Notes under the pieces: generated by a model
The model's database searches: none
Seen by the model: only the letters and a program-made list of their open reading frames with translations
Told to the model about the DNA's origin: nothing
Program-made: the position numbers and the translations under genes
Source of the DNA: Macrostomum lignano
Lineage: Eukaryota
Assembly (NCBI GenBank): GCA_002269645.1
Contig: NIVC01002869.1
Coordinates: 1 to 64,000, forward strand
Direction of reading: 5' to 3'
Length of the DNA: 64,000 nucleotides
In this document: piece by piece, positions 7,347-53,037 of the stretch
How positions within the stretch are numbered: the first letter of the stretch is position 1
Layout of the letters: each line of letters begins with the position of its first letter

Positions 7347-7374
7347 CTGCAGCGTTGAAGCAGAATGAGCATTA

Positions 7375-8057: not shown

Positions 8058-8088
<31 letters not shown>

Positions 8089-8101
8089 GCATCTGTCCGC
8101 C

Positions 8102-8136
<35 letters not shown>

Positions 8137-8169
8137 ATGCATATGTCTGTCTATCTATCTATCTATCTG

Positions 8170-8212
<43 letters not shown>
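7375..8212. repeat. TGTC-derived 18-20-bp minisatellite grading into (TGTC)n and (TATC)n
   Basis: Unit ctgtctgcatctgtccgc; fills the last PCID2 intron. Confidence 0.95.
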
Positions 8213-8333
8213 GTCATGGGCAATAGTGCGTCTCGCCGGTTGCGTGACAATGTCGCTTAAAGTGCGCCAGGGTGCACATGGCTCCCGTCTCTAATAAAAA
8301 ATCTATATTCCCGCACAGTGCAGCATGGCTCAC

Positions 8334-18881: not shown

Positions 18882-19348
<467 letters not shown>

Positions 19349-19982
19349 GACACGCTAGTGCAACAATGCTTCGTGAATGCATTGCAAACAAGTCCAGTGC
19401 AGGTCTTTCATCGGACTAACTCAATTTCGTATGGCTTCGCTCCTCCCACCCCATACTGCCTCAAAGCAGACGGCTGAGCAGCTGTAGATGGTTCTGAGGT
19501 GTCGCAGAGTGCAATGGGATCCTTTAGAGAATGAAAGCCGGCCAAAGCAGACTGTGAGCGCGCATGCTAGAAACGGAGCCCCCGAGCCTGCTGAGGTCAC
19601 GTGACAGCCAAGGAGTTGAATAGGACTCAGCTATGGGGCCGCCAGTGCTACAGCCAGCCAGCATTAGCAGCTGGACCGGACTTGGCCCGGCTTTGGCGGC
19701 ATGAATTTGCGGAAGCCCTACCGGTATAGACAGGCGCCGCGCCAGCCCGCATGCTGCGAGGGATCGGGGAGGAGGCAGCGCAGGGGGGAGGGCGGCTTGC
19801 CCAAGGAGACCAGCGACCAGAATCTGGAGTGCGCATTTCACCCCTTTTTTAATTCAAGGCGCATAGCTTCGATAAGATTCTCGATAATTTCCAAACGGCA
19901 AAACCGATTTTTAATTATTCAGTTGTTTCATTTATGCGTCAGAAAAAGTTTATTTATGAAGTAGAAAAAATGATTCTGTATT

Positions 19983-21089: not shown

Positions 21090-21809
21090 ATGACCAGCAG
21101 ACAGTTGGAATGCGAGCTCAAGTGCCCGCTCTGCCGCAGGTGGCTCAACCAGCCAGTGCTGCTGCCCTGCGGTCACTCGCTCTGCAGCGCCTGCTGCCTC
21201 GGCAGCTTTCAACAGCAGCAGCAGCCGCCACCGCATCAGCACCAGCAGCAACAACAACTGGCGGAGGCAGCGGCTGACAACTCCGACCAGGCCTCGGTGC
21301 TGTCTGAGGCGGACTCCGGCGTCTCCATACCGTCATCTTCGTCTAGCGGCGGCGGCGGCGGCGGCGGTGGGGTCGGCTTCCTCTGCCCGACCTGCCGGCG
21401 GCCTGTGTCGTTGCAGCAGGCCGCTCTGCCACCGCGCAATCCGGCGCTGGAGCGGCTGGTTGCTAAGCACGCCGCGGCCAGCAGCCAGCCGTTGCTATGC
21501 TCAGCGTGCTCCCCAACTGAAGAGGCTGGCGCAGCTACAATAGTCTGCGAACAGTGCGAGATGTACTTTTGCGACAGGTGCTCGGGCAGGACTCACGACC
21601 AGCAGCAGCAGCACCACCTGTTGCCCGCTGCACTCGGTCGGGACCTGCTGAGCCAGAAGCAGCTGCACAGAGCGGCTCTGTGCCAGACACACCGTCAGGA
21701 GCTGCTGACTCTGTACTGCCGCACCTGCTGCGTCGCTCTGTGCGGCAACTGCGTCGGTCACGCCGGGCACGAGCTCGAGCCGCTGCAGGCCTGCTGCAAG
21801 GCGCGAAAG
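21090..21809 (+). CDS. TRIM9: TRIM9/TRIM67-family E3 ligase exon 1 (RING, B-box1, B-box2); join(21090-21809,28803-28898,32059-32292,33365-33524,34605-34744,37804-38167,43542-43849) = 2022 nt, 673 aa
   Basis: CPLC..CGHSLCSAC..(long insert with SEADSG)..CPTC RING with the subfamily-typical insertion; two B-boxes; donor AAG/gtttgg. Confidence 0.92.
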
Positions 21810-22169
21810 GTTTGGCACTGAGACTCAACTAAGGGGCGGATTAAGTCAATCAGTTTCAGCCTATGTGTAATTTTGGCCTCGTTGCCTGACCGTGTAGAGA
21901 GGCGAGTAGAGAGTGACGATCAAAGAGAACCGCCTTGACCTCCGCCTGGCAATAATGGGCTGTTGGGTGCCAAAAATAAAGCCTAACTGGCTTTTAGTTT
22001 TACAGTTTCAAAGCCCCTGGAGAGGGTGTGAGACCAGGCCGGGGCCACTCACTGCTCTCCGGCTTCCTCTCTTTCATAGTGACTTTTACGTGTATTCAAG
22101 TTTCAGTTCTCGCTTGGCCCACACAACTCATTGTTTCAATATTTCTCACTCCAATTGTGCAAGCAGACT

Positions 22170-28923: not shown

Positions 28924-31378
<2,455 letters not shown>

Positions 31379-32058
31379 GGTTTTAAACAGAAAATCAACA
31401 TTATTGATTGCCACTGCAGCTACTCCTCAGCTGAAACATCCCCAGACAGTTTATTCAGCTCAAACGTAGAAGTCCACACTGCAGCTTAAATTCCTTACCA
31501 ACCAAGCAGCTTGGCTACCTCTTTCACCTTAGAAACTCCGCAACGCTCCGGCAATTCTTGTCGTTCCCATCGCCCTCCCAGCCTCTTTCTCGCCCAGCTC
31601 AGCTGCCTCTCTCGCCCAGCGCAGTGCAGGCAGGTTTTTCTCTTCAAAAGCGGTTTTTTCTGCTAGCTAGCTGCAGCTCAAAATAAGAAGTGGAGAATGA
31701 ATAGTGGAGAACTCTCCTTGTTACTCAGCTGGCGTGTCAGTTGCACGATGAAGCGCAGCTGCCGGGGCCAAGTAGGAGAGCGGAGGCTGGACCGGGAGCT
31801 GGCTGGGGTCCTGCATCCGTCGGGGTCCTCTTGAGCTGGAGAAGGACAGAAAAATAGAGAGAGAGAGAAAGAGGGAGAGAGAGAGAGAGAGAGCAGCCTG
31901 GCTGGCTGGCCATGTTCTACCTCCGCCAGGGACCTCTAGACATTTAGCGCCGGTGGACTGGAAGCTAAAATAACACCCCACCTCCCCCAGTTTAACTTTG
32001 ACAATTTTGAAAAAAGATTAGTATGACTAGAAAGATCCAACCTTCACATCACTTTCAG

Positions 32059-34444: not shown

Positions 34445-34861
<417 letters not shown>

Positions 34862-35719
34862 TAAAAAAAGATTTCTACTGATCAATTGTACACTACTAAT
34901 TCTAAAAATAGATTAGATGGCCTCCACAGAGAGAAGAGGGAAAGCGATCAATACTCGGGAGCCATGCGCATTTTTAGAAAAATCGATTGAACTGGTTTCC
35001 AGACTTTCTATCCCCTAAGCGTGTTTTCATGTGGAGGGGGCGGGGTTGCTGATGCGTCTGTTTTGATTTAGAATACATGGGAGGCAGAAAATTTCAAAGT
35101 TCTAGAATGCCCACGAGGTGGCCGCTATTGTCTACCCGTGTCCGACCTCATTAATTAAGAGATTACCGATATAAATATGAAACTATGCATCTTCAGTAAG
35201 TAAATTCAAATTTATTATGAAACTAACACAAAATCCGGCCACTGATTGATCGATTTGCTAAGCTTCATTATTCAGGACACAGGATTAAGTAAATATTCGT
35301 CACGCAAACTCTGAATTTTGCTGGCAGTCAATCAGCAGTTTGAAGATTGCAACAAAGTTACTGAAGAAACAAGTAAAACAGTCAGCGCAGACAAGCTATT
35401 TGTGTCAGTCGAAACTTGAACGCTTTTTAACTGACAGTTGGCCTCTTAGCACAGAAAAAAGGAGCTCAACAGCCACTCACTAAACAGCTGGGGTTGCTTT
35501 CCCCATAGCAACCAAGTTGCTCCACAAATCTCCACTTAAGCCAGAGCATTCTAAAAACAGCAGCAGTCGCTCCTGCCAGCTCACTTTCTCTTTCAAGTGG
35601 AGTTCTACCCGAGCTATGAACTTTCTGTAATCTATACGCCTTTTTTGGCATCAGACTTGCTGACTGGCAGATAATGCTGTATTAACCATCGAGCATAAAA
35701 ATAAAAGTATCAAATAATG

Positions 35720-37762: not shown

Positions 37763-37803
37763 CGTCTCATTGCTCACTCCCTCACCCATTGCAATGCCAT
37801 CAG

Positions 37804-38167
37804 CGCTGCTACCGCGGTCAGGAGACGGTGTGCTGCGTGCAAGGCCTGCAGTTCGACACAGTCTATCAGGCCCGGGTGAGGGCGCACAACTCGGCGGGCG
37901 AGTCCGACAGCAGCGACTTCGTCAAATTGCGCACCGCTGGTCGAGCGTTCTTCCAGTTCTCGCCGGAGGACTCGCACCCGGATCTGGTGTTCACCAACCA
38001 GGGCATGTCCGTGACGTCAACCTCGTTGGAGGAGCGCGTGGCCGTCTGTACAGTGGGATTCTCGCACGGCGTGCACTACTGGGAGTTCGTGGTTGACCGC
38101 TACGACGACAAAGGCGATCCGGGCTTCGGCGTGGCCCGGCTCGACTGCCGGAAAGATGAGAAACTGG
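37804..38167 (+). CDS. TRIM9: TRIM9-like exon 6 (FN3 end, SPRY start)
   Basis: ccatcag/ [52 protein letters not shown] /gtgagt; 364 nt. Confidence 0.94.
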
Positions 38168-39269
38168 GTGAGTTCACGCTGTGCGGGGTGGTGGAGGGAC
38201 ACAGTGGCGAACTGCCAGCCAATCAGCGATCAGCTAGGGTGAGAGAGATAAGTGGAAGGAGGAGGGGAGGCGTCGTTGGCTGGTGTACACTGCCTATGTA
38301 CATCGATCTGCACTGGATTCTTAGAAAAGTTTATTACTACCTCGTTTGTACTCGCTTTTGTATTTAGCACCCCCTGCTTCGTAGTTGGTATAATTTATTA
38401 TAATATGTCGATTTGAATGTGCTACAATTTGAACAGGAATCTAATTTAGTTTTTGCAATGAGAGACTGTCATTTTGTAAATTTAGAATGAAAAAGTTTTC
38501 ATTTCTCTATTCGGAGTTCCCATCTCCGGGCTTAGCCATAAAGCAACAAAAGGAGTTAGCTGGGAATAGGATGGCAGCCATAATCTTCCCAAGGCATTGG
38601 CGGCACTTCCTTTCCTTTGCATATTTCCGTCTCGTTGGCGGCTGACCCCAGTCCTCGCCCTTGTGCCCCCCCCCCCCGCCGCCGCCGAACGATGGCGGTC
38701 CTGCTCTCTCCCAGTGTTTGTTCGAGAGTCTCTCCAGTGTGTGTGTGCGCCAGTGAATGTAATAAGCTGGCAGAGTGGTCGTGTCCTGCACAGCGTTGTG
38801 TTTTAGTTGACCTCGCATGACTCACGGCCGCCTCCGATCTCTCCCTCTCTCTCTCTCAGACTCAAGCGCGTGGCCCTGCATGCATGTTTTTGTGTGCGCA
38901 TTGTATTTTGTTAGAAATATATGGCCAGATTGGCTGGCAGCGAGGAGAAAAGGAGACGTTTTTATGACCTATTGGCAACAGTGAGGGGGGGGGTAGCCCG
39001 GCGTAGCCCACGCCTCACCCTGAGCCATTCCCCCTGCCTCAGAGGCGGCTTGTTCTCAATAAAAAATCCTTTGAGATTGCCCGCACCGTCTCACTGTCGC
39101 CAATAATGGGGGGGGGGTAAGTGCGCTCCACGCGTCTTCTGTTTCTCCTGGCTTTCTACCTGACCCCTGCCGTCCCAGCAAGCCTCCATCCCTCATCGTA
39201 ACATGTGTCTCCATCTTCTCTTGCTTGCTTATTTTCTTCTCCGTCTCCTTCCCTTTTATCTTTCTTTCA

Positions 39270-40288
39270 GGTTTCCCTCTCTCCTGTCTCCCTCTTCTGT
39301 CTCTCTCTCTCTCTTCTGTCTCCCTCTCTTCTGTCTCTCTCTCTCTTCGGTCTCCCTCTCTTCTGTCTCCCTCTCTTCGGTCTCCCTCTCTTCGGTCTCC
39401 CTCTCTTCTGTCTCTCTCTCTCTTCTGTCTCCCTCTCTTTTCTGTCTCCCTCTCTTCTGTCTCCCTCTCTTCTGTCTCCCTCTCTCTTCTGTCTCCCTCT
39501 CTTTTCTGTCTCCCTCTCTTCTGTCTCCCTCTCTTCGGTCTCCCTCTCTTCGGTCTCCCTCTCTTCTGTCTCTCTCTCTCTTCTGTCTCCCTCTCTTTTC
39601 TGTCTCCCTCTCTTCTGTCTCCCTCTCTCTTCTGTCTCCCTCTCTTCTGTCTCCCTCTCTCTTCTGTCTCCCTCTCTTCTGTCTCCCTCTCTTCTGTCTC
39701 CCTCTCTCTTCTGTCTCCCTCTCTTCTGTCTCCCTCTCTTCTGTCTCCCTCTCTTCTGTCTCCCTCTCTTCTGTCTCCCTCTCTCTTCTGTCTCCCTCTC
39801 TCTTCTGTCTCCCTCTCTTCTGTTTCCCTCTCTTCTGTCTCCCTCTCTCCTGTCTCCTTCTCTTCTGTCTCCCTCTCTTCTGTCTCCCTCTCTTCTGTCT
39901 CCCTATCTTCTGTCTCCCTCTCTCTTCTGTCTCCCTCTCTTCTTTCTCCCTCTCTCTTCTGTCTCCCTCTCTCTTCTGTCTCCCTCTCTTCTGTCTCCCT
40001 CTCTTCTGTCTCCCTCTCTTCTGTCTCCCTCTCTTCTGTCTCCCTCTCTTCTGTCTCCCTCTCTTCTGTCTCCCTCTCTTCTGTCTCCCTCTCTTCTGTC
40101 CCCCTCTCTTCTGTCTCCCTCTCTTCTGTCTCCCTCTCTTCTGTCTCCCTCTCTTCTGTCTCCCTCTCTCTTCTGTCTCCCTCTCTTCTGTCTCCCTCTC
40201 TTCTGTCTCCCTCTCTTCTGTCTCCCTCTCTTCTGTCTCCCTCTCTTCTGTCTCCCTCTCTTCTGTCTCCCTCTATTCGGTCTCCCTC
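39270..40288. repeat. Pyrimidine-rich 16-18-bp minisatellite (TRIM9 intron 6)
   Basis: Unit ctctcttctgtctccc. Confidence 0.95.
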
Positions 40289-41765
40289 TACTAGCTACTC
40301 AATACTTAGCTAGCAGTCACTTTCCAGCGCAAAAAAATGTTCCAAATCCCGCATCCCAGGAAGTTGGGAAGCAAATCAGGGGGAGGGGATATTTCTCAAG
40401 CCCACTTGCTTGCCTCACTAAAACCGAGCCGCTTCCTGCTCCTGCGGCGAATTAATGAACCGCGCTCTGCTTTCGGTCAAGCCGCTATGCGAGCTGCCCC
40501 GCGTGCACTGCAGTCAGGACAGGAAGACTAAGATTGAGTGGGGGGCTCCGCAGATCCTCTAGTTCGGTGCATGATAGAAAACACACACACACACGAACCG
40601 CCTCTCCGGTGCCCCAGTTCTGATCCCATATTTAACTCCCAGAGGCAGGACGGCAGGGCTCCAAGGCTCCGCCCATTCGACATCCGGTGGAGCAGGCAGG
40701 CGAACTGCTCAGAGAGACTCCAAGCCAAGGAGTAGGCAAAGCAATAATCTCAAACATCCGATTGTCAAAAAAGATTTTGCCTTCGATTCCACCATTGTTT
40801 GGTCCGCTAGCGACTTGGTATTCTGTCCTACTTAATAGACTGGCAAACAAGCGAGCCAAGAGGCCGTGAGGGGACGGGCTCAGCCTTTTGACGCGACATA
40901 TTTGCCCGCAAAGTGACTTTCTCATAGAGCCGAGGACTAAATGCTGTAGATAAAGCTAAGCGGACAGCAGTGCAAGAGAAAAGCTGTCGCGCATTATAAT
41001 TGAGAGAGTTGAAATTTCCTTGCCAAAAGTACAAATGCAGCTGCGTAGGTGTTGGCTATCCATGAGCACTGTTTGCTCAGAATGCTCTGCTCACACAAGA
41101 CATGGCTTAAATGCAATAGTCCTTCAGACAGGCATTCTATGCATGCAAAATAAACTTTAGAATGCTGAAGAGAGTTCTTCTGCAGCACCTGTAGACTGGG
41201 GTCTCGTGGGCGTTCGCTCATCAAGCAGTCGCTTTAAAGGTGCTCACCAAATTAAGCCAGCAATGCTCCTGTCAATCATGCATCATTAAGCAATGGGAGT
41301 CAAGGAGAATAATATAATATATCGCAAATGGGATTGATAGAATTAGGCCTAATTACAAGCTTTAATGCCATCTCAAAGTCAACTAACTATGCAAGAGAAA
41401 GCTCTGAAGAGTGCGCTAGAGGAGGATTTGCTCCCGGGGAAAAGACATTGAAGCACACTTTTTTTAGAAGCACTTCTTCATCCCATAGCTTGCTGTGAAG
41501 TGGCGGGGTTGTGAATATTGATTGCACGCTAAGCAATCGTGTGCCCTCCCCCCCCCCTGGCCAGAAAGCAGACGCACAGAGTAGCCTAGAGGGGAGAAAG
41601 GAGAAGAGAAAGTCCAGAAAGATGCTTCTGTTGTTGTTGCTGCAAGCTTGGCAGGGCACAGAGTGTCCCAGCCGCAGCTTCCAATATGCCAGCAGTAGTG
41701 CAAGAGCATGATCGATCGCCATTAGCTTTAATCACCATGAAACAAGACTGAAAATCTTAGACAAT

Positions 41766-43506
41766 AGCACCATGAGACACCGGTTGAACAGACCATAGCA
41801 CCATGAGACACCGGTTGAACACACAATAGCACCATGAGACACCGGTTGAACAGACAATAGCACCATGAGACACCGGTTTAACACACAATAGCACCATGAG
41901 ACACCGGTTGAACAGACCATTGCACCATGAGACACCGGTTGAACAGACCATAGCACCATTAGACACCGGTTGAACACACAATAGCACCATGAGACACCGG
42001 TTGAACAGACCATTGCACCATGAGACACCGGTTGAACAGACCATAGCACCATGAGACACCGGTTTAACACACAATAGCACCATGAGACACCGGTTGAACA
42101 GACAATAGCACCATGAGACACCGGTTTAACACACAATAGCACCATGAGACACCGGTTGAACAGACCATTGCACCATGAGACACCGGTTGAAAAGACCATT
42201 GCACCATGAGACACCGGTTTAACACACAATAGCACCATGAGACACCGGTTGAACAGACCATTGCACCATGAGACACCGGTTGAACAGACCATAGCACCAT
42301 TAGACACCGGTTGAACACACAATAGCACCATGAGACACCGGTTGAACAGACCATTGCACCATGAGACACCGGTTGAACAGACCATAGCACCATGATACAC
42401 CGGTTTAACACACAATAGCACAATGAGACACCGGTTGAACAGACCATTGCACCATGAGACACCGGTTGAAAAGACCATTGCACCATGAGACACCGGTTGA
42501 ACAGACCATTGCAGCATGAGACACCGGTTGAACAGACCATTGCACCATGAGACACCGGTTGAACACACAATAGCACCATGAGGCACGGGTTGAAAAGACA
42601 ATAGGCCATGAGGCACGGGTTGAAAAGACCATATCACCATGAGACACCGGTTTAACACACAATAGCACCATGAGGCACCGATTGAACAGACCATATCACC
42701 ATGAGACACCGGTTGAAAAGACCATTGCACCATGAGACACCGGTTGAAAACACTATAGCACCATGAGACACCGGTTGAAAACACAATAGCACCATTAGAC
42801 ACCGGTTGAACAGACCATTGTACCATGAGACACCGGTTGAACACACAATAGCACCATGAGACACCGGTTGAACAGACCATATCACCATGAGACACCGGCT
42901 GAACAGACCATTGCACCATGAGACACCGGTTGAACACACAATAGCACCATGAGGCACCGGTTGAACAGACCATTGCACCATGAGACACCGGTTGAACACA
43001 CAATAGCACCATGAGACACCGGTTGAACAGACCATATCACCATGAGACACCGGTTGAACACACAATAGCACCATTAGACACCGGTTGAACACACAATAGC
43101 ACCATGAGACACCGGTTGAACACACAATAGCACCATGAGACACCTGTTGAACACACAATAGCACCATTAGACACCGGTTGAACACACAATAGCACCATGA
43201 GACACCGGTTGAACACACAATAGCACCATGAGACACCGGTTGAACACACAATAGCACCATGAGACACCGGTTGAACACACAATAGCACCATTAGACACCG
43301 GTTGAACACACAATAGCACCATTAGACACCGGTTGAACACACAATAGCACCATTAGACACCGGTTGAACACACAATAGCACCATTAGACACCGGTTAAAC
43401 ACACAATAGCACCATGAGACACCGGTTGAACACACAATAGCACCATGAGACACCGGTTGAACACACAATAGCACCATGAGACACCGGTTGAACACACAAT
43501 AGCACC
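41766..43506. repeat. Minisatellite of about 31 bp (TRIM9 intron 6)
   Basis: Unit accatgagacaccggttgaacacacaatagc; ends about 35 nt before the exon 7 acceptor. Confidence 0.95.
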
Positions 43507-43849: not shown

Positions 43850-44722
43850 CCAGAAGTGACTGAGAGTGACAAGAAGTGACTAAAAGGGAGAAAAAGTCTG
43901 AGAGTGACTAGGAGGGATAAAAAGTGACTATAAGAGACTGTGAGTGACTAGAAGAGACCAAGAGTAGCCAGGTGTGACTAGAAGAGACCAAGAGTAACCA
44001 GGTGTGACTAGAAGAGACCAGGAGTAACCAGGTGTGACTAGAAGAGACCGAGAGTAACCAGGAGTGACTAGAAGAGACCAGAAGTAACCAGGAGTGACTA
44101 GAAGAGACCAGGAGTAACCAGGAGTGACTAGAAGAGACCAGGAGTAACCAGGAGTGACTAGAAGAGACCAGGAGTAACCAGGAGTGACTAGAAGAGACCA
44201 GGAGTAACCAGGTGTGACTAGAAGAGACCAGGAGTAACCAGGTGTGACTAGAAGAGACCAGGAGTAACCAGGAGTGACTAGAAGAGACCAGGAGTAACCA
44301 GGAGTGACTAGAAGAGACCAGGAGTAACCAGGTGTGACTAGAAGAGACCAGGAGTAACCAGGAGTGACTAGAAGAGACCAGGAGTAACCAGGAGTGACTA
44401 GAAGAGACCAGGAGTAACCAGGAGTGACTAGAAGATACCAGGAGTAACCAGGAGTGACTAGAAGAGACCAAGAGTAACCAGGTGTGACTAGAAGAGACCA
44501 GGAGTAACCAGGTGTGACTAAAAGAGACCAGGAGTAACCAGGTGTGACTAGAAGAGACCAGGAGTGACCAGGTGTGACTAGAAGAGACCAAGAGTAACCA
44601 GGAGTGACTAGAAGAGACCAAGAGTAACCAGGTGTGACTAGAAGAGACCAGGAGTAACCAGGTGTGACTAAAAGAGACCAGGAGTAACCAGGTGTGACTA
44701 GAAGAGACCAGGAGTGACTAGA
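43843..44722. repeat. 30-bp minisatellite starting at the TRIM9 stop codon
   Basis: Unit ggagtgactagaagagaccaggagtaacca. Confidence 0.92.
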
Positions 44723-45394
44723 AGAGGCGGAGTCATAAAAAGACTGCTTGACTCTGATTAGTCAAACAAATTTTCAATCGCTATGATTTTTCAGTCTCAA
44801 TTTTTCTCAGCAAATGAACAGATGCTTAAAGACATACTTTGCCTGTCTTCGTGGTTAAAATTGACACTTATGCTGCACTGTACATAACAGCAAAACACAC
44901 ACAGGAGCCCCAATTTCTGATCAATTCTATTTCTTATCATCTTAATGTTTCAATGTTGTAAGCCATGTTTCAATATTTACTGCTGAATATGCAGATTTGA
45001 AGCAATAGCATTAGCAATAACAGCTTTGCGTATTTTATAACCAAATAGCAAGTCCCCTTTGATGTGTAAATAAACTCATTAACCTGTTTGGCCCCGAAAT
45101 AGAACTATTATTATACCCATAAATCAAAGAGGATTCTTTGTATCGTTTCGAATCAAATCAGTGTAATAAACAACAGTATCAATGCAATAAAACAACAAAA
45201 GCAACAACAATAAAAACATCAAGACAAAAGCCTCCAGCTATAGACATAGGTCTCCAAGTTGGCCTCGGGATTCCCGTGGCGAATTTCGGATTTCCCTACT
45301 ACTTTAACCATAGAATATATGCACGTTGATCACGACTGGGTAGCGGGACAGATTCTCCTACTAGATTGTACACCTGTAGAAAGCCAATCGCATA

Positions 45395-46176
45395 TCGGAA
45401 ACCTATGTCCGGAGACCTATGTCCGGAGGCCTCTGTCCGGATGCCAATGCCCTCAAATCTATGTCCGGAGGCCAATGTACGGAGACCTCTGTCCGGAGAC
45501 CTCTGTCCGGAGACCTCTGTCCGGGTAAAACTGCTCCGATAAGTGAACGGTTTATAAAGGATTTGATAATCAAAACGATCATCATTTCATTAACTGCATT
45601 CAAACTACCTGTCAATGCGTACTACAATACATTAACTCAACCCATAATTCTGTAATGCATTAAAATGGAATAAACAAGCAGCGTTGCATTATCACACTCA
45701 AACGACCTATGGATACGCAATACATTGAAAACGATTTATAATTCCGTAATGTATCAATCATACATGGATCAATGTATTAAATCGATCTGCAGGTTCTTGA
45801 TGGATTGTGCTGAAACGGTATGAGTTAAGGTGGAGAGATCTGATGGAGAAATTTGACTGGTTAATAGCACTTGACGATTAAATCAATAATCCATGGATCA
45901 ATAAACTAAAACGATTGATCGGCTTGTAACACCTTGGACTAGATTTAGGTTAGGCTCATGTATACGGTTACACTTAGGTTAGGCTTATGGTTAGGCTTAG
46001 GGTTACAGCTCGTAAGTTTAGGTTTATGGCAGGGACTACTCCGACACCGTGTTTGAGTAGTCCCTGGGTTAAGGTTAAAGTTAAGGTTTGGTTTTCAATG
46101 TGAGTTCGGGTTCGCGTTCGCGTTCGGAGACATGGCAGGAATTGTCTGTCGGGCGTCGGAAACTGTATGCACTACC
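45395..46176. mobile_element. Unclassified repeat element with subterminal (gtccggagacct) repeats, telomere-like TTAGGN tract and 12-bp hairpin
   Basis: About 7 copies of tgtccggag at 45405-45525; degenerate ttagg(n) units 45944-46092; stem-loop 46030-46066. Boundaries uncertain. Confidence 0.45.
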
Positions 46177-46247
46177 TACTGAGGTCTGGATTCATCAACA
46201 CGCGTAAGTATTCTTTTAGGTACGCGTTAGGTACGCCTTAGCCACTA

Positions 46248-46336
46248 GTTTGTAGCGTCGTTGTGGTTGGAGCGTCGGACTCACGACTTGAAGGTCGGGG
46301 GTTCGATTCTCGATCCACTCGGAACAATTTGTATCC
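46248..46336 (+). mobile_element. 5-prime fragment of the same SINE
   Basis: tgtagcgtcgttgtggttggagcgtcggactcacgac...ggttcgattctcgatccactcggaacaatttgt matches the heads of copies 1 and 2. Confidence 0.7.
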
Positions 46337-46508
46337 GCAATTTGCATCAGCAATTTCAACAACCGTTGCGACCGCAACCGCGTCCTCGGTCTCTGCAGTA
46401 GCAACAGCAGCAACAGCAGCAACTGTCTCGACCGCAACCGCGTCCTCGGCTTTTTCTGCAGCAGCAACAGCAACGGCGGACTTTGCAATCAGGAAATCTG
46501 CAACAGGA

Positions 46509-46540
<32 letters not shown>

Positions 46541-46825
46541 TTGGCCGTGGCAATCGTCGGCAAGAGCTAGTCCGTCTATTCAGACGCGTACAGATGTGCC
46601 GTCGGTTGTGTACAGAACGACTTGACGTGTGTATTAACTGTGCATCGTTCATAAATGAGCAACGTGCATCAAACTATCGCACGCTTAATGATATGCTGGG
46701 CGGCGCATACCAAGTCGGTACTGACACTAGTCAACAGACTAATCCTGCCGACGCAGTACGCAGCGATAATGATGCTGCTGCCGAGTCCGCTACTCCTTCT
46801 GCTGCCACTGTTAATGCCAGTTTGA

Positions 46826-47536
46826 CAGCCACCACAGCCACAGAAAATATCGCCACGACAGGAGTCAATCGACTTACAACAATACGCACAGTCTGTCCAA
46901 CGATTCGTGCCGTATGCGAAGCCATTGCGACAGGAGAAGGGTGTCGTCTACTTGTACGGCCCTTCCGGTGTTGGTAAAACGCACACCGTATTTGAGCATT
47001 GTGGCGATCGTCGGGTTATTAACATCACCCCCCCCGTCTCGCACTGCAGCCAATACATTTTTATTCAATCAGTTGGACGTGACTATACACAGCGTCATGT
47101 TTATCGACTATCTGCGTCCCGACTTGTTCGACGACAATTCCGATGTCAGGGTGAGTTAAAATCATTGACATGGAATTCCGATTATACGCGTATGAATTTA
47201 TAAGCAACACTTATTTATTATTATCATCGCACCCGTAAAAAATCGCACCCGTAGCTCTCGCTACTTCGACTGATCAACGGCAACACCTTCACTGTGAATG
47301 CCAAATACCAGTCTGTAAGGAGCGAGACGTGGCGAAATCGGCTACTTGTGTTCGCGGGACATGATCCTGTCGCGTCATATTCGCCCGGCGTACAGTGCCG
47401 ACTGAAGAACGGCAGTATGCTGAGGGATCGGCTCGTCACAGTAATCTATGTTGGACATCCGTTGGATGGAACATACGATTGCGACGAGACATGTGTACCT
47501 CTTCGCGATTCATACGGAGATCCACCTCGTCTCTAG
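46826..47536 (+). pseudogene. Parvovirus NS1/Rep-like superfamily 3 helicase fragment (endogenous viral element or domesticated gene), with one intron (47151-47254) and one frameshift (C8 run 47028-47035)
   Basis: Walker A VYLYGPSGVGKT (GPSGVGKT at 46958-46981); NTFLFNQ resembles AAV Rep NENFPFND; Walker B VMFID (47094-47108); B-prime LINGNTFTVNAKY; Arg-finger MLRDRL resembles PLQDRM. Motif spacing fits SF3. Confidence 0.75.
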
Positions 47537-49639
47537 TCTGTTTTTAATTACTGACTGACTGTCAAATGGTGCGTCAACGCTTTGATTCCGTATCGCGATG
47601 TACACAGGACCCACAAGTACGCTGGCTTCTCGATTGTCGCATATCTACTGCAATAGTTGTTGCATTGCGCGTATTTTTTTCTGTTTCATAACAGCTAGTA
47701 TAGTTCATTGTGACGAAAGTACTACTCGTAACTCGTAACGTCTATTGTGTTTGTCCGTTTAGAGAAAAAACTTTAGTTTCATATTTGCCTGTTTTGCGCG
47801 CAGCCCAGTTGTCGATTTGATAAAGACAGTATCAAATCGCACGATGGATGCAAAAACAGTTGTGTTTATTAAATGCTGTGTTGCACTCGTATGCGTGGGT
47901 CTATCTATATAGTACATAAATTAATCGGGCTGCGCCGTTATTGCCTCATTAGGTGTTACGCTCGTGTGTAAATACACATCTGTTCATACCTGTTTCGTTA
48001 CCTTGTACACGTTATCTATACGAGCTAGATTGTCACGTCTCCGCTTTTCTTTTCATTCAAGATTTCATTCTCAGCAACATTGAAAATTGTAAATTGAAAA
48101 TTGAAAATCACGGTGTGCGAGGGTTGGACGGATTAAAGCCGATCAGTTTTCTCGTATCTTTTATTTTAGACTAGTCCAAGAGAAATTGCTCACTGGCGCA
48201 TAGAGTGGCGGCTTTTCAATGTTGCTGAGTATAATGCACTCGATTTTAAATGCTGCCAATCCAACTCATTGCTAGTATATAGGTATCGTGTTATTGCACT
48301 ATTAGTTGGCCATAGACGATTTAATGTATGCATTTAATCAATACTGCGCGTTCGCGCCCTTTTGTCTCTTAATTCTCTTTCGCCCGTTGCAAACGATATT
48401 GCCATAGACCAAGTGCACAAGCGTGAATACCAAATGACCTCGCCTTCGACCAATACATATAGGCGAGAAATCGATTAACTGGCTAATTTAATCATTGTTT
48501 CGTACCAACAAGTATCCCGGCAAAATGGCAAAAACAACAACAAAAACAACAGCAACAGCAGAAATATGACATGTATATTACGTCACTACCTCAGACCTTA
48601 ATTAATGCCAACCAAGGTTCGTTCCATATCCAATCTTATTTTCAATAAGGGTATCTTACTTCCTAGGTATATATGAGCTAGTAAAAAGCTGTACTGAATG
48701 ACGCCAAAATAATATTTTAGAAATTCCTGAATCTGTTTCTTAGAATCTGTAGCGGAGTTGAGTCGGCGCCCGTAAAAGCTTATACTCAACTTTAGTCAGT
48801 CAGGCGGTCAGCTTCTTCCACCCAATTTATCTGGCAGTGTAGTAGATCCGATGTCAAAGCAGAAATTGACTTCCTCACACTCTTCTAGAGAAGGGGGGGT
48901 TGGGACAGAAAAGTCGGGAAAGAAAGAAAAACAGAACGGAATTGAGAGGGGGCTAACTCAAGAAGGAAGAGGAGAAAGTGAGTGATTGAAGTGGACTGCA
49001 GGCTCCGGCTGTTACGTCATCCGCGGAATGTGTCACTATAGCTGCATACAGCGGGAGTTAACTTATAACACCCTGAGCTACAGCAGCTGTAATGCATAGC
49101 CGGCCCATCCTGATTCTGCTCTGGTCAACCCGACGCAGTGACTCACGACGCAGGCGCGGCGCCCGATCGGCATTCCGAACCGAACGCATCTTTTATCTCC
49201 GCCCCCCCCCATCGCAGGGGATTGCCCCATGCAGCGCCTGCCTTCGGGCCGTTTCTCGATTAGTTTTTCTCCCCAGCCGAAAAAAGCTGATAATAATGAG
49301 ATTGAGAGGAGAGGCCGAGCGCCGACTGAGTGCCGAGTGTGAGAAAGAGTGACTCACACCCAGGGCAGGAAGAAAGGTACAAGGCCGGGGTTGCCGCAAA
49401 CGAACGAGATTTGCGCTAGCGGGCCACCTCTGCGAAATGAGGAACGATTTCTCAACTAATTTTTGCAAAAACAGCTAAAATCACGACCAAATGCGCTGTA
49501 AAAACGCAGGTGTATATCTTCATTATTTTATTGTCTACCGGTAATTGATTTATTCATGCATTAGCGAACTTCTTTTCAGGTCTTCAGTTTGAATCACCAT
49601 CGCCTAGGCTCCTCAGTTGCTGAACTGTTACCCTCCCAG

Positions 49640-51030
49640 ATCCTCAGTTGCTGTGCCAGATTCACGGATCCTCAGTGTTGCTGTGCCAGATTCACGGATC
49701 CTCAGTGTTGCTGTGCCAGATTCACGGATCCTCAGTGTTGCTGTGCCAGATTCACAGATCCTCAGTTGCTGTGCCAGATTCACGGATCCTCAGTGTTGCT
49801 GTGCCAGATTCACAGATCCTCAGTTGCTGTGCCAGATTCACGGATCCTCAGTGTTGCTGTGCCAGATTCACGGATCCTCAGTGTTGCTGTGCCAGATTCA
49901 CAGATCCTCAGTTGCTGTGCCAGATTCACGGATCCTCAGTGTTGCTGTGCCAGATTCACGGATCCTCAGTGTTGCTGTGCCAGATTCACGGATCCTCAGT
50001 GTTGCTGTGCCAGATTCACAAATCCTCAGTTCCTGTGCCAGATTCACAGATCCTCAGTTGCTGTGCCAGATTCACAGATCCTCAGTTGCTGTGCCAGATT
50101 CACGGATCCTCAGTGTTGCTGTGCCAGATTCACAGATCCTCAGTTGCTGTGCCAGATTCACGGATCCTCAGTGTTGCTGTGCCAGATTCACGGATCCTCA
50201 GTGTTGCTGTGCCAGATTCACAGATCCTCAGTTGCTGTGCCAGATTCACGGATCCTCAGTGTTGCTGTGCCAGATTCACGGATCCTCAGTGTTGCTGTGC
50301 CAGATTCACGGATCCTCAGTTGCTGTGCCAGATTCACAGATCCTCAGTTCCTGTGCCAGATTCACAGATCCTCAGTTGCTGTGCCAGATTCACAGATCCT
50401 CAGTTGCTGTGCCAGATTCACGGATCCTCAGTTGCTGTGCCAGATTCACGGATCCTCAGTTGCTGTGCCAGATTCACAGATCCTCAGTTGCTGTGCCAGA
50501 TTCACGGATCCTCAGTGTTGCTGTGCCAGATTTACGGATCCTCAGTTGCTGTGCCAGATTCACGGATCCTCAGTGTTGCTGTGCCAGATTCACGGATCCT
50601 CAGTGTTGCTGTGCCAGATTCACGGATCCTCAGTTGCTGTGCCAGATTCAGGGATCCTCAGTTGCTGTGCCAGATTCACGGATCCTCAGTTGCTGTGCCA
50701 GATTCACGGATCCTCAGTTGCTGTGCCAGATTCACGGATCCTCAGTTGCTGTGCCAGATTCAGGGATCCTCAGTTGCTGTGCCAGATTCACGGATCCTCA
50801 GTTGCTGTGCCAGATTCAGGGATCCTCAGTTGCTGTGCCAGATTCACGGATCCTCAGTTGCTGTGCCAGATTCACGGATCCTCAGTTGCTGTGCCAGATT
50901 CACGGATCCTCAGTTGCTGTGCCAGATTCAGGGATCCTCAGTTGCTGTGCCAGATTCACGGATCCTCAGTTGCTGTGCCAGATCACGGATCCTCAGTGTT
51001 GCTGTGCCAGATTTACGGATCCTCAGTTGC
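49640..51030. repeat. 28/31-bp minisatellite upstream of the GPCR
   Basis: Unit gctgtgccagattcacggatcctcagt(tgt)t; degenerate copies recur at 51592-51748. Confidence 0.95.
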
Positions 51031-51779
51031 AGGGCCCTAACCTTCTCAGATCCTAAATCAACTTTCCAACAAGATCCGGGATTATAGTTCTGAGGTTGCA
51101 ATGTTTCGAGACTTTTTTTGCTTATTAAAGTTGATATGAAAGACAAATTCCCAACAGCCTACTCTTGTAAAAGTAGTAAAATAAGCCCGCTATACGAGCT
51201 ACCCAAATTTAGCAGGCAGAAAACGACAGAACGGAACTCCCGCACGGCTTATGGAAGCTGCAAGCCAGAATTAGGGAAATCTCCTAGTGAATTGGGAGCG
51301 AGGGAAGAGCGGTCGAGAGGATGGAGGGTTGGGAATAAATTCTACACTCAAGCCTCAGTCGTCCAATGGCGCAGGCCTTGAATGGCACTATATATCAGCT
51401 ACCGATGGGGGCGAGCCGCCTGCCTGCTTCGCTGCCTACCCAATTCGCATTGCAGCTCTGAGCTCATTTTGTGCTTCTTAATTATTGTTTTGCTGCTGTA
51501 ATTATCCATAGACACTGCCGTATTGTCTGCTTCAAGTATGAATAATAGGTAAGTAGCAGAGGGACACTGGGCATGGGCCATCCCCCACCTTCCCAGATCC
51601 TCAGATTGTGCGGCTACCCTCCCAGATCCTCAGATTGTGCGGCTACCCTCCCAGATCCTCAGTTGCTGGGCCAGCCTCCCAGATCCTCGGTTGATGGGCC
51701 AGCCTCCCAGATCCTCAGTTGCTGAACCAGCATTCCAGATCCTCAGTTGAAACCTTCCTCATTTTTCAGTAGCAACTTC

Positions 51780-52217
51780 ATGCAGGAGCAGCAACTCTGC
51801 TTCAAGAACGCCAGCCTCGAATGGTTCGACTGCTCCGGCTGCGGCCAAATGCGCGCCGTCGACTCTTCCTGGTGGCGCGCCGTCGTGGTGTTCGTGGTGT
51901 CTCTGCTGGCCGTGCCCGCCAACCTGCTGGTCATTGTGATTGTCTACCAGACGCCCGCCCTGCGGAACAACCAGGGCATCTACATGCTGTGCCTGGCGCT
52001 CAGCGACCTCGGCACTGGCCTGTGGTTTCTGGCGTTCTGCTTTCGCTACGCCGTCACCGGCTACGGGCCGCAGTCACCCGAGGAGCTGGACATCGGGGCC
52101 TGGGTGTACTACCTCACCATCACCACTGCGCTCTGCTTCACCCTGGCCATCGGCATGGACAAGCTGCACCAGATCAAGTGGCCTTACAGCTACGATCGGG
52201 TCATGACCAGGAGAAAG
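51780..52217 (+). CDS. Class A (rhodopsin-like) GPCR exon 1 (TM1-TM3); join(51780-52217,52291-52989) = 378 aa
   Basis: ATG 51780; ANLLVI (TM1), LALSDL (TM2), IGMDKL (DRY position); donor AAG/gtgcga. Confidence 0.85.
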
Positions 52218-52290
52218 GTGCGAGACGGTGGTAACTTGGGAGTTTCGATTCATATTTAGGCAAGCCAGCTGTCAAACCCACCCGCCACAG

Positions 52291-52989
52291 GTGATCGCAA
52301 TAGCTTCCAGCATCTGGCTGGTCATCGGCATTCTGAGCCTTCTGCCAACTCGAATCGTGCCAATCAGCGGCTATTACTACGAGTTCACGAGCAGTTCGCT
52401 CATGTTCAACACCAAAACCTGCGGAGCCAACGCGCACAGCAAAGTGGACGTGACCCTGGTGGTCACCCGCATCGGCCTGATCCTGTTCATGGTGGTCATG
52501 CTAGTCGGCGGCTACGGCAGCCTGTTGGTCATCTCCCGCCGCCATCTGCGCAACATGCAGCGAATGCAGGAATGCGCGGCCGCTGCGCCGCTCCGACCGC
52601 AAGCGGCCGACGTTGACGGCATCGACAGGGACAGCGGCAGCGGCGGCGGCGGCAACGGCAGGAGCAGCAAATACGAGAGTCGCAGGAGCGGCCTGCGTGG
52701 CTGGATTACCAACGCCTGCGTCATTCTTGGCTTCCTGGTGTGCTGGCTGCCATTCTTCATCTACAAGATCGCCATCGCGATCGGGCCGGGCGGCGGCGAC
52801 ACGGAGACCGGCCAGTTCTGCATCATCTGGTTCACCATGAACTACACCAGCATCAATGTTGCTATCTATGGCGGCACCTATAAGCCGTTTAAGAAGGGCG
52901 CAAAGCGCTTCATCGGGAGGCTGTGCGGAAAGTCTGTGGCGAAGCGCGAGGAAATGTTCATGTCGCAGCGGGGGCACAACAGGCGCTGA
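52291..52989 (+). CDS. Class A GPCR exon 2 (TM4-TM7 and tail)
   Basis: 73-nt intron 52218-52290 ends ccgccacag in phase 0; IW in TM4, FLVCWLPFF in TM6, NVAIY in TM7, helix-8-like FKKGAKRF. Confidence 0.88.
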   Translation: MIAIASSIWLVIGILSLLPTRIVPISGYYYEFTSSSLMFNTKTCGANAHSKVDVTLVVTRIGLILFMVVMLVGGYGSLLVISRRHLRNMQRMQECAAAAPLRPQAADVDGIDRDSGSGGGGNGRSSKYESRRSGLRGWITNACVILGFLVCWLPFFIYKIAIAIGPGGGDTETGQFCIIWFTMNYTSINVAIYGGTYKPFKKGAKRFIGRLCGKSVAKREEMFMSQRGHNRR

Positions 52990-53037
52990 GCTGATCACGA
53001 CTGGGATAACTACGAGGCGCAGGGGGTGGTCGCAGAG

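What the first reader, a model, noticed from the sequence alone, without database searches (positions are those of the whole stretch)
46826..47536. Hidden parvovirus NS1/Rep-like SF3 helicase containing a spliceosomal intron
Seen: three short ORFs join into about 200 aa after removing one C from the C8 run (47028-47035) and an AT-rich 104-nt phase-0 intron (AGG/gtgagt 47151 to cccgtag/CTC 47254). The product is ...EKGVVYLYGPSGVGKTHTVFEHCGDRRVINITPPSRTAANTFLFNQLDVTIHSVMFIDYLRPDLFDDNSDVR/LSLLRLINGNTFTVNAKYQSVRSETWRNRLLVFAGH...SMLRDRLVTVIYV. Known: motif order and spacing follow SF3 helicases of small DNA viruses (AAV Rep GPATTGKT, NENFPFND, LGGSKVRVDQK, PLQDRM). Parvovirus-related sequences and the planarian extrachromosomal element PEVE are reported in flatworms. 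Unusual: the intron lies between Walker B and B-prime, Walker B is DY rather than DD/EE, motif C lacks its Asn (LLVFAGH), and no nuclease or capsid gene is nearby. Inference: a highly divergent virus lineage, a new SF3-helicase mobile element, or a domesticated intron-bearing host gene; the frameshift may be a homopolymer sequencing error.
Basis: partly seen in the sequence, partly recalled or inferred. Interest (0 to 1): 0.85.

Follow-up and report, generated by a model that had tools for sequence, protein, structure and literature searches.

The report
Broken virus-derived helicase gene copy
This stretch of the flatworm Macrostomum lignano genome is a truncated, frame-broken copy of a small, unstudied gene family descended from the helicase half of a small DNA virus's replication protein; the copy is probably dead, but its intact relatives look like working genes.

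Summary
They tile in order onto an intact 252-aa paralogue in the same species (Macrostomum lignano PAA62424.1) and onto three relatives from one JGI metagenome sample.

The SF3 call holds only indirectly. The window pieces hit no SF3 family in Pfam, PHROGs, NCBIfam or PDB. The family profile, however, aligns to genuine Rep helicases at 99% hhalign probability. A model of the paralogue matches almost only CRESS Rep and parvovirus NS1 in the viral fold library. Affinity to parvoviruses in particular is unresolved.

- Homology continues upstream in a third frame, so the gene spans 46558-47536 and has two frameshifts, not one.
- All three relatives are uninterrupted where the window carries its 104-nt GT-AG segment.
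- "AGH" in place of the motif C asparagine is shared by the whole family.
- Walker B is DE in the relatives.
- Longer relatives carry an N-terminal domain that the window copy lacks.

Intact members evolve under strong constraint (dN/dS about 0.07).

Verdict: most likely a 5'-truncated pseudogene of a Rep/NS1-derived flatworm gene family. The intron is plausible but unproven. Interest is moderate.

The parts
46558..47536 (+). Broken copy of a Rep/NS1-derived SF3-like ATPase gene, given as one part from first homologous base to stop codon. In order it holds a short helical, Cys-containing N-terminal region with a low-complexity expansion, then the P-loop ATPase core (Walker A, F-x-F-[DN] motif, Walker B, B'-like LLRL-NG...K motif, AGH in place of motif C, Arg-finger region), then a Cys-containing tail. 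Breaks: 2 frameshifts, 1 intervening 104-nt GT-AG segment (intron or insertion), no in-frame stops inside the homologous pieces. Relative to the longest relative it also lacks about 240 N-terminal residues and has no start codon at the position where relative P0006 starts.
   Evidence: sequence and frames; relatives found and named; tblastn/tblastx collinear tiling; alignment of the separate pieces to the relatives; upstream frame matches the P0006 N-terminus, E 3e-5 and 0.002, collinear; 66 of 95 family-invariant residues kept; no N-terminal-domain homology upstream.
46340..46540 (.). Neighbour, not part of the gene: a CAG/CAA/GCA-rich microsatellite-like tract directly against the 5' end of the homologous region. 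It marks where homology to the relatives stops.
   Evidence: direct-repeat families D3, D4; poly-Q / poly-A reading frames; its only Rfam match, isrG at 24.5 bits against a cut-off of 100, is low-complexity noise.
51780..52989 (+). Neighbour, not part of the gene: a two-exon rhodopsin-type GPCR gene with a 73-nt GT-AG intron. The public gene model A0A1I8FT91 (P0001) fuses the helicase-like pieces to this gene.
   Evidence: ORFs, intron sequence, spliced host product of 378 aa; P0001 sequence and its UniRef name.

Best explanation
Window 46558-47536 (+) is a 5'-truncated, frame-broken paralogue, most likely a pseudogene, of an uncharacterised Macrostomum gene family. The family descends from the helicase half of an HUH-SF3 replication initiator (Rep/NS1) of small ssDNA viruses: the helical region before the core plus the SF3 AAA+-like ATPase core.

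Shown:
- Homology of the window pieces to intact relatives.
- Homology of those relatives to Rep-type SF3 helicases.
- Strong purifying selection on intact members.
- Host-chromosome context in M. lignano.

Inferred:
- Intact members are probably still oligomeric NTPases. They keep Walker A, Walker B (DE) and an Arg-rich finger region. All have His where SF3 helicases have the sensor-1 Asn. The longest ORF has Arg where a related Rep has its catalytic Tyr, so they probably no longer nick DNA.
- The window copy probably makes no functional protein. It has two frameshifts and one 104-nt intervening segment. It has lost the Walker B glutamate and 29 of 95 covered family-invariant residues, and it lacks the N-terminal domain.
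- The 104-nt segment arose in this copy after duplication. It looks like a host intron, but whether it is spliced is unknown.
For: (1) Relatives. Exhaustive phmmer found P0002 (M. lignano PAA62424.1, 252 aa, intact, single exon in L002) and P0004. Follow-up searches found P0006 and P0007, from JGI sample 3300040801.

(2) Tiling. The window pieces, kept separate, cover the relatives in order. tblastn gives E 1e-16 to 1e-18; tblastx gives a combined 4e-26. The upstream third frame matches the P0006 N-terminus.

(3) SF3 identity.
- P0002 aligns to PF00910 over profile positions 1-88 of 105, and P0006 to PF19263 over 1-106 of 114, both below cut-off.
- The next-best database proteins are P0009 (PF19263 33.2 bits and PF00910 22.3 bits, both above cut-off), P0010 (HUH-like motifs plus SF3) and P0013 (Viral_Rep 63.9 bits).
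- P0002 against P0010 by BLASTP: 175 aa, E 1e-10.
- hhalign of the family against these Reps: 99.0%, 112 columns, 30% identity.
- The family-plus-Rep profile against PDB: full-domain matches to parvovirus NS1 9kbj (E 0.0027) and an 'NTPase' 9r34 (4.7e-4).
- AF2 model of P0002: pLDDT 69.5, core 80-93. Foldseek against BFVD: the top 50 are nearly all CRESS Rep or parvovirus NS1, E 3e-7 to 9e-6. Against PDB: papillomavirus E1, AAV2 Rep40/Rep68 and PCV2 Rep ATPase (TM 0.62-0.65 by target length) sit among generic AAA+ proteins. The model has a helical N-terminal region and no C-terminal lid.

(4) Constraint. L003 against L004: pN 0.14, pS 0.71, dN/dS about 0.07.

(5) Decay of the window copy. Frame breaks, 66 of 95 invariant residues kept, and no N-terminal-domain, nuclease or capsid-like remnant anywhere in the window. 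No window ORF is on record as a called gene. The only public model of the locus is a chimera with the GPCR that hops frames with invented introns.

(6) Host context. L002 lies in a 220-kb contig near COG7 and EME1/MUS81 genes.
Against: - The copy is not heavily decayed. It keeps 69% of family-invariant residues and has no in-frame stop inside the homologous pieces. A live gene with assembly errors is therefore not excluded.
- One frameshift sits in a homopolymer, a typical long-read error site. I could not tell which assembly the window comes from or inspect reads.
- The 104-nt segment has a perfect AG|GTGAGT donor. GTRAGT occurs about once per 1000 bases on this strand. Its removal would put the two flanking pieces in one frame, as expected of a real intron.
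- The SF3 link is transitive. No curated SF3 model reaches its cut-off on any flatworm member.
- The Rep sequences used for the profile comparison and for the AF2 alignment were chosen because they resembled the family. That inflates the hhalign E-value and may bias the model.
- The PDB fold search ranks generic AAA+ proteins (Hda, RavA, Rix7) as high as SF3 helicases.
Confidence: 0.65

Rival explanations
1. Live, intron-bearing gene. The frame breaks are assembly errors and the 104-nt segment is a true spliceosomal intron gained after duplication. The locus would then encode a divergent helicase-only SF3-like ATPase.
For: - Consensus donor, AG acceptor and a frame-preserving length. The size (104 nt) is close to the one verified host intron in the window, 73 nt.
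- No stops inside the homologous pieces, and 69% of invariant residues kept.
- The public model A0A1I8FT91 uses the same junction.
- One break lies in a homopolymer. The M. lignano assemblies rest on PacBio data (PMC5730564).
Against: - There are two separate frame breaks, and the second is not in a long homopolymer.
- The Walker B glutamate and 28 other family-invariant residues are replaced.
- There is no start codon at the position where P0006 starts, and the N-terminal domain is missing.
- Three relatives have no intron there.
- No called gene matches any ORF of the locus.
- The public model needs two further invented introns to hop frames.
Confidence: 0.2
2. Not virus-derived. The family would be an orphan cellular P-loop/AAA+ ATPase of flatworms, and its likeness to SF3 helicases would be convergent or reflect only the shared ASCE fold.
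For: - No curated SF3 Pfam model passes its cut-off on any family member. PF00004 (AAA) scores 25 bits on P0002, above its cut-off.
- The PDB fold search is led by Hda, RavA and Rix7.
- The sensor-1 Asn is absent in all members.
- The genes lie in host chromosomal context.
Against: - The PF00004 match rests on the 16-residue P-loop, while PF00910 and PF19263 align over the whole core.
- The best non-family proteins among 5.8 billion are Rep-type SF3 helicases, two of them with HUH nuclease domains.
- The alignment to Rep P0010 runs 175-221 residues and extends N-terminally past the ATPase core into the linker and the motif III position.
- hhalign gives 99%.
- The viral fold library returns Rep/NS1 and not other viral P-loop proteins.
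- The model has no AAA+ lid.
Confidence: 0.08
3. Part of an active mobile element, an episome like PEVE, or contaminating viral DNA, rather than a fixed host locus.
For: - The family is multi-copy: at least 2 loci in M. lignano and at least 3 in the JGI sample.
- Intact members are under purifying selection.
- L004 is a short contig with hairpin-forming palindromes near one end.
Against: - The window copy lies inside a 64-kb host sequence, between host microsatellites and a GPCR gene.
- L002 lies in a 220-kb contig with COG7 and EME1 genes.
- No capsid-like, nuclease or terminal-repeat feature flanks either M. lignano copy.
- Scans of IMG/VR with the window pieces or the family profile found no relative; the only hit was a generic ClpB-type P-loop.
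Confidence: 0.04
4. A chance assembly of short ORFs around a fortuitous Walker A motif.
For: Each piece alone hits nothing specific. A bare GxxGxGK[ST] motif is expected 0.27 times per window.
Against: All pieces align collinearly to intact relatives with E down to 1e-18 and 4e-26.
Confidence: 0.01

Closest known systems
SF3 helicase domain of ssDNA-virus replication initiators: CRESS-DNA virus Rep (e.g. PCV2 Rep ATPase, PDB 8xms) and Parvoviridae NS1/Rep (AAV2 Rep40/Rep68, PDB 9rm5/9bu7; NS1, PDB 9kbj)
   Same: - The same order of Walker A, an F-x-F-D/N motif, Walker B, a B'-like motif with a conserved Lys, motif C position and Arg-finger region, with the short Walker A-to-B spacing.
- A helical region before the core and no C-terminal lid.
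- Best matches in the viral fold library.
- 99% profile match to Rep helicases.
- Helicase-only products also exist in AAV (Rep52/Rep40; my own knowledge, not tested here).
   Different: - The sensor-1 Asn is replaced by His in every member.
- No curated Pfam SF3 model passes its cut-off.
- There is no recognisable HUH nuclease. The longest relative has Arg and Gln where Rep P0010 has the motif III Tyr and Lys.
- No capsid gene and no terminal repeats.
- The genes are chromosomal host loci.
- The window copy is broken and has lost the Walker B Glu.
Endogenous parvovirus- and CRESS-like elements of animals, including flatworms: parvovirus-related sequences in 19 platyhelminth species (PMC5013282), and PIVE in Schmidtea mediterranea with the episomal PEVE of Girardia tigrina (PMC3198968, citing PMC116598)
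   Same: - Rep/NS1 helicase-derived sequence integrated in a flatworm genome.
- Often only the NS1 SF3 domain survives.
- Frame disruptions and adjacent repeats are common (PMC5013282).
   Different: - Macrostomum does not appear in that survey or its supplement.
- The published flatworm sequences were found by at least 30% identity to NS1, whereas this family is too divergent for any direct NS1 hit.
- Intact members here are under strong purifying selection.
- No PEVE or PIVE sequence was available in the tools, so no direct comparison was made.
Papillomavirus E1 / polyomavirus large T SF3 helicases (PDB 7apd, 2v9p, 1tue)
   Same: Fold-level match (ranks 6 and 44). Weak PPV_E1_C matches of the linking Rep-like proteins over about 100 residues.
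   Different: E-values are no better than for generic AAA+ proteins. There is no origin-binding domain and no dsDNA-virus context.

Membership tests
SF3 helicase (Rep/NS1/E1/2C type) | Walker A GxxxxGK[ST] preceded by a hydrophobic strand | tested here: met
   VVYLYGPSGVGKT in the window. Conserved in all relatives that cover this region.
SF3 helicase (Rep/NS1/E1/2C type) | Walker B: hydrophobic strand ending in two acidic residues, about 40-55 residues after Walker A | tested here: inconclusive
   The relatives have hhhhDE at the expected spacing. The window copy keeps the Asp but has Tyr for the Glu.
SF3 helicase (Rep/NS1/E1/2C type) | Motif C with the sensor-1 Asn at the end of a hydrophobic strand | tested here: not met
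   All flatworm-family members and the window have A-G-H where P0009, P0010 and P0013 have (C/T/I)-S-N.
SF3 helicase (Rep/NS1/E1/2C type) | B' motif between Walker B and motif C, and an Arg finger after motif C | tested here: inconclusive
   LLRL-NG--F-IN-KHQ and FQRRL are invariant in the family and align to the matching Rep segments. The window copy has substitutions in both. Their function was not tested.
SF3 helicase (Rep/NS1/E1/2C type) | A curated profile hit above threshold (PF00910, PF19263, PF01057, PF00519) | tested here: not met
   Window pieces: only a 17-residue P-loop match to PF00910, E 0.14. P0002: PF00910 at 17.5 bits against a cut-off of 21.5. P0006: PF19263 at 19.2 bits against 27.6. 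No PF01057 or PF00519 hit.
SF3 helicase (Rep/NS1/E1/2C type) | Profile-profile homology to bona fide SF3 helicases | tested here: met
   hhalign of the family against P0009/P0010/P0013: 99.0%, 112 columns. The comparators were chosen by similarity to the family, so the E-value is optimistic.
SF3 helicase (Rep/NS1/E1/2C type) | Fold: ASCE core with an N-terminal helical region and no AAA+ C-terminal lid | tested here: met
   AF2 model of P0002 (pLDDT 69.5) shows helices 22-86, then the core, then a short tail. BFVD top hits are Rep/NS1. PDB hits mix SF3 with generic AAA+. The model's alignment included Rep sequences.
Parvoviridae NS1/Rep gene or endogenous parvoviral element | HUH nuclease domain N-terminal to the helicase | tested here: not met
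   tblastn of the Rep proteins P0010 and P0013 and of the L004 N-terminal domain finds nothing upstream in the window. In L004 the position aligned to the motif III Tyr of P0010 is Arg.
Parvoviridae NS1/Rep gene or endogenous parvoviral element | Direct sequence similarity to NS1 (PF01057 or NS1 structures) | tested here: inconclusive
   No PF01057 hit on the window pieces or the family. The family-plus-Rep profile matches NS1 9kbj at E 0.0027 over the full domain. CRESS Reps score equally well by fold.
Parvoviridae NS1/Rep gene or endogenous parvoviral element | Capsid gene or terminal hairpins nearby | tested here: not met
   No flanking inverted repeats of that kind. The only capsid candidate to hand (the L005 422-aa ORF) has no match in the window. 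No true capsid comparator was available.
Spliceosomal intron | GT-AG ends with a consensus donor, frame kept after removal, host-like length | tested here: met
   The host GPCR intron used for comparison is 73 nt.
Spliceosomal intron | Conserved position in homologues | tested here: not met
   L002, L003 and L004 are uninterrupted across the site.
Spliceosomal intron | Spliced transcripts | not testable with these tools
   No read or transcript data were available. Exact-ORF look-ups of unspliced ORFs found nothing.
Processed or decayed pseudogene / dead endogenous viral element | Reading frame disrupted relative to intact homologues | tested here: met
   Two frameshifts and one intervening segment. 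Whether they are real or assembly errors could not be tested.
Processed or decayed pseudogene / dead endogenous viral element | Relaxed constraint (loss of invariant residues, neutral dN/dS) | tested here: inconclusive
   29 of 95 family-invariant residues are lost, including the Walker B Glu. Synonymous sites are saturated against every available relative, so no dN/dS could be computed for this copy.

The most novel reading that the evidence does not exclude
The intact relatives (PAA62424.1 and the JGI copies) would be a domesticated viral replicative helicase: a Rep/NS1 descendant that has lost nuclease chemistry and swapped its sensor-1 Asn for His. It would be kept under strong purifying selection as a multi-copy host gene family in macrostomid flatworms. 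The window copy would then also record a spliceosomal intron gained inside a virus-derived, originally intronless gene.
Probability: 0.3. Interest if true: 0.65.

Novelty: new member of a known kind. Interest (0 to 1): 0.4.

Why it matters
Rep/NS1-derived sequences are already known in animal genomes, flatworms included, so the locus itself, a broken copy, is ordinary.

Three things are worth keeping:
- The family is unannotated ('hypothetical protein') and too divergent for standard domain searches. It shows what such scans miss in a regeneration model organism.
- Its intact members are under strong constraint, with an altered catalytic signature. That is the pattern expected of a co-opted viral helicase and could be followed up with expression and distribution data.
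- The only public protein model of this locus (A0A1I8FT91) is a chimera of pseudogene pieces, tandem-repeat sequence and a GPCR, and should not be trusted.

Tried and rejected
- Pfam, PHROGs and NCBIfam on each window piece, and on the single-frame translation with X at stops: only generic P-loop hits.
- phmmer of each piece against PDB: noise, such as glutamate carboxypeptidase and ABCE1.
- Word-indexed homologue search with the single-frame translation: nothing. The exhaustive search was needed. Two of its five hits, P0003 and P0005, are repeat proteins and were discarded as noise.
- IMG/VR scans with pieces 1 and 3 and with the family profile: one ClpB-like P-loop match (L001), otherwise nothing.
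- The scan with the Rep profile gave one 2-kb contig with an SF3-like ORF (L008). It adds little.
- Metagenome scan with the family profile: nothing.
- Exact look-ups of three window ORFs as called genes: none on record.
- AF2 with the 3-sequence alignment: pLDDT 51.7, not used for fold search.
- Family-only profile against PDB: P-loop matches only.
- Rfam on the locus: only a low-complexity false positive.
- The 104-nt segment has no second copy in the window, so there is no sign here that it is a repeated insertion element.
Full report
**What is in the sequence**

The window is eukaryotic and packed with microsatellites and tandem repeats. It has no tRNA or Rfam gene at gathering score. The segment is 65% A+T against 49% for the flanking homologous sequence.

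A bare GxxGxGK[ST] motif is expected 0.27 times per shuffled window. One preceded by a hydrophobic strand occurred in none of 200 shuffles. That is suggestive for one window but not for a genome-wide scan.

**The pieces alone identify nothing**

Each piece was kept as it stands. So was the single-frame translation with X marking stops. All were scanned against Pfam, PHROGs, NCBIfam and PDB.
- Only the Walker A piece scored, and only against generic P-loop families: AAA_16, AAA_22, FlhF and ABCE1. PF00910 reached E 0.14 over 17 residues.
- The other two pieces matched no family, even at E <= 10.
- The one IMG/VR match of the Walker A piece is the D2 P-loop of a ClpB-like chaperone.

**Relatives exist**

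The word-indexed protein search found nothing. The exhaustive phmmer search of 1.84 billion representatives found three real relatives.
- P0001 is UniRef A0A1I8FT91 from Macrostomum lignano, which identifies the organism. It is a gene model of this very locus. It strings together tandem-repeat sequence, parts of all the homologous pieces and the downstream GPCR.
- P0002 is PAA62424.1 (BOX15_Mlig013629g1), an intact 252-aa hypothetical protein of M. lignano. It is encoded without interruption in a 220-kb contig near COG7 and EME1/MUS81 genes (L002).
- P0004 is a fragment of a relative from JGI sample 3300040801.

Follow-up searches added P0006 (208 aa) and P0007 from the same sample. The annotation of the assembly that holds P0002 was built from transcriptome assemblies (PMC5730564). 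The paralogue is therefore probably transcribed; this is an inference.

The separate window pieces tile the relatives in order.
- tblastn of P0002, P0006 and the long L004 ORF against the window gives E values from 6e-14 to 1e-17.
- tblastx against L002 gives four collinear segments, combined E 4e-26. L002 is continuous while the window changes frame and skips the 104-nt segment.
- L003 and L004 are also uninterrupted there.

The ORF in the third frame (46483-46977) matches the N-terminus of P0006 in two collinear blocks, E 3e-5 and 0.002. The homologous gene therefore spans about 46558-47536.

Relative to its intact relatives, the copy carries two frameshifts and one intervening 104-nt segment, with no in-frame stop inside the homologous pieces. 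It also has a low-complexity expansion in the N-terminal region and no start codon at the position where P0006 starts.

**What the family is**

The family conserves these motifs:
- GPSGVGKT behind a hydrophobic strand.
- An F-x-F-D-G-L motif.
- Walker B of the form hhhhDE.
- LLRL-NG--F-IN-KHQ.
- A strand ending in A-G-H.
- FQRRL.
- A DHDI--C-G-C tail.

Evidence for SF3 identity:
- On the intact members, PF00910 (P0002) and PF19263/DUF5906 (P0006) align over nearly their full lengths, but below their cut-offs.
- A profile search of 5.8 billion proteins returned Rep-type SF3 helicases as the next-best hits. P0009 passes both PF19263 and PF00910. P0010 is a 371-aa protein with HUH-like motifs I-III ahead of the helicase. 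It sits on a 3.2-kb Logan contig with an opposite-strand 422-aa ORF. P0013 is a CRESS Rep with Viral_Rep at 63.9 bits.
- P0002 aligns to P0010 over 175 residues at E 1e-10, starting well before the ATPase core.
- hhalign of the family against these three Reps gives 99.0% over 112 columns at 30% identity. The comparators were chosen by similarity to the family, so the E-value is optimistic.
- P0010 itself weakly matches parvovirus NS1 (9kbj) and papillomavirus E1 (1tue) over the full core. The combined profile matches NS1 at E 0.0027.
- An AF2 model of P0002 made with the 8-sequence alignment reaches pLDDT 69.5, and 80-93 in the core. It shows a helical N-terminal region, the core and no lid.
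- In the viral structure library its top 50 matches are almost all CRESS Rep or parvovirus NS1.
- In PDB, E1, AAV2 Rep40/68 and PCV2 Rep appear among generic AAA+ proteins.

I conclude that the family descends from the helicase half of a Rep/NS1-type protein. Whether it is nearer to parvoviruses or to CRESS viruses is unresolved.

AGH in place of the motif C Asn is shared by every family member. It is a family trait and not decay. DY for Walker B is peculiar to the window copy; the relatives have DE.

**Longer relatives**

In L004 the helicase is the C-terminal part of a 444-aa ORF. L002 has the same N-terminal domain upstream of the annotated start. There it lies in another frame and is interrupted: one frame change and at least one stop.

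BLASTP of the L004 ORF against P0010 starts exactly at P0010's motif III. L004 has Arg and Gln where P0010 has the Tyr and Lys. This points to a nuclease relic without its catalytic tyrosine, but the evidence is one pairwise alignment.

The window has no trace of this domain or of any nuclease or capsid-like ORF. Homology ends at a CAG-rich microsatellite.

**Constraint**

The two JGI copies differ at 71% of synonymous sites but only 14% of non-synonymous sites, so dN/dS is about 0.07. Intact members are working genes.

Comparisons with M. lignano are saturated. No dN/dS can therefore be given for the window copy. It keeps 66 of the 95 covered columns that are invariant in three intact members. 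At the 157-160 covered columns identical in the two JGI copies, it keeps 81 where intact P0002 keeps 99. That is more diverged, but not wrecked.

**The intron**

For a true intron:
- A perfect AG|GTGAGT donor. GTRAGT occurs about once per 1000 bases on this strand.
- An AG acceptor.
- A length that keeps the two flanking pieces in one frame.
- A size near that of the verified 73-nt host intron in the neighbouring GPCR gene.

Against, or neutral:
- Three relatives lack it.
- It has no second copy in the window.
- No transcript evidence could be obtained.

It arose in this copy after duplication. Whether it is spliced is open.

**Verdict**

The most likely reading (0.65) is a 5'-truncated, frame-broken pseudogene of a Rep/NS1-derived Macrostomum gene family. 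The main rival (0.2) is a live gene whose frame breaks are assembly errors. The assemblies rest on PacBio data polished with Illumina (PMC5730564), and I could not establish which assembly the window comes from.

Rep/NS1-derived insertions in flatworm genomes are known (PMC5013282; PMC3198968). Macrostomum is not among the reported hosts, and this family is too divergent for the searches used there.

**Limits and procedure**

No product joined across the breaks was built or searched. The intact paralogue was used instead. This report gives counts of breaks only.

Noticed in passing
window 45259-45655 and 51780-52989; protein P0001: The public protein A0A1I8FT91 ('G_PROTEIN_RECEP_F1_2 domain-containing protein') is a chimeric gene model. 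It joins a 14-nt tandem-repeat array, the helicase-like pieces and the downstream GPCR. In the GPCR part it flips between frames where the window has clean ORFs, which suggests it was predicted on a lower-quality assembly.
   Followed up: partly
window 51780-52989 (+): A two-exon rhodopsin-type GPCR gene with a 73-nt GT-AG intron and a spliced product of 378 aa. This exact product is not in the protein collection.
   Followed up: partly
window 21090-21821, 34481-34864, 37789-38367 (+): The ORFs read like exons of a TRIM-type gene: a RING C3HC4 and B-box-like Cys/His patterns, then fibronectin-like and SPRY-like stretches. This was judged only by reading the translations.
   Followed up: no
window 46216-46330: Translations such as GFDSRS (+) and RESNPRP (-) suggest a tRNA-derived SINE-like fragment just upstream of the CAG tract. 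ARAGORN and Rfam found no tRNA here, so this is unverified.
   Followed up: partly
window 4350-5400, 7200-8300, 18750-19480, 29100-31400, 39200-40450, 41700-43300, 43900-44620, 49590-51090, 52500-54000, 55700-56800, 60290-62720, 63490-63990: About a third of the window is long tandem arrays (tetranucleotide arrays and longer units). They create ORFs of up to 808 aa in several frames on both strands, and none is likely to be coding.
   Followed up: no
L002 8454-10082 (upstream of the annotated paralogue PAA62424.1): Homology to the 444-aa L004 ORF continues upstream of the annotated start of PAA62424.1. There it lies in another frame and is interrupted (one frame change, at least one stop). The annotated 252-aa protein may therefore be the surviving helicase half of a longer gene.
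   Followed up: partly
L004 1531-2865 (+) and L004 1-192: A 444-aa uninterrupted ORF joins an N-terminal domain to the helicase. At the position aligned to the motif III Tyr-x-x-Lys of Rep P0010 it has Arg and Gln. The contig's first 200 bases hold two hairpin-forming palindromes, one a perfect 18-nt pair. The source organism of JGI sample 3300040801 is unknown.
   Followed up: partly
L002 11201-11922: A small element with perfect 48-nt terminal inverted repeats encloses a 111-aa ORF that reads like the helix-turn-helix part of a Tc1/mariner transposase. It lies 450 bp downstream of the paralogue and is unrelated to it.
   Followed up: no
L005 (Logan SRR28040978, 3230 bp): A Rep-like gene (P0010: HUH-like motifs plus an SF3 helicase with the canonical motif C Asn) faces a 422-aa ORF with no Pfam match, and partial ORFs run off both contig ends. 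It looks like a small ambisense ssDNA virus genome of unknown host, and it is the nearest Rep-bearing relative of the flatworm family.
   Followed up: partly
window 46323-46539 (-): An Rfam 'isrG' match (24.5 bits, gathering score 100) falls on the CAG-rich tract. It is a low-complexity false positive.
   Followed up: yes
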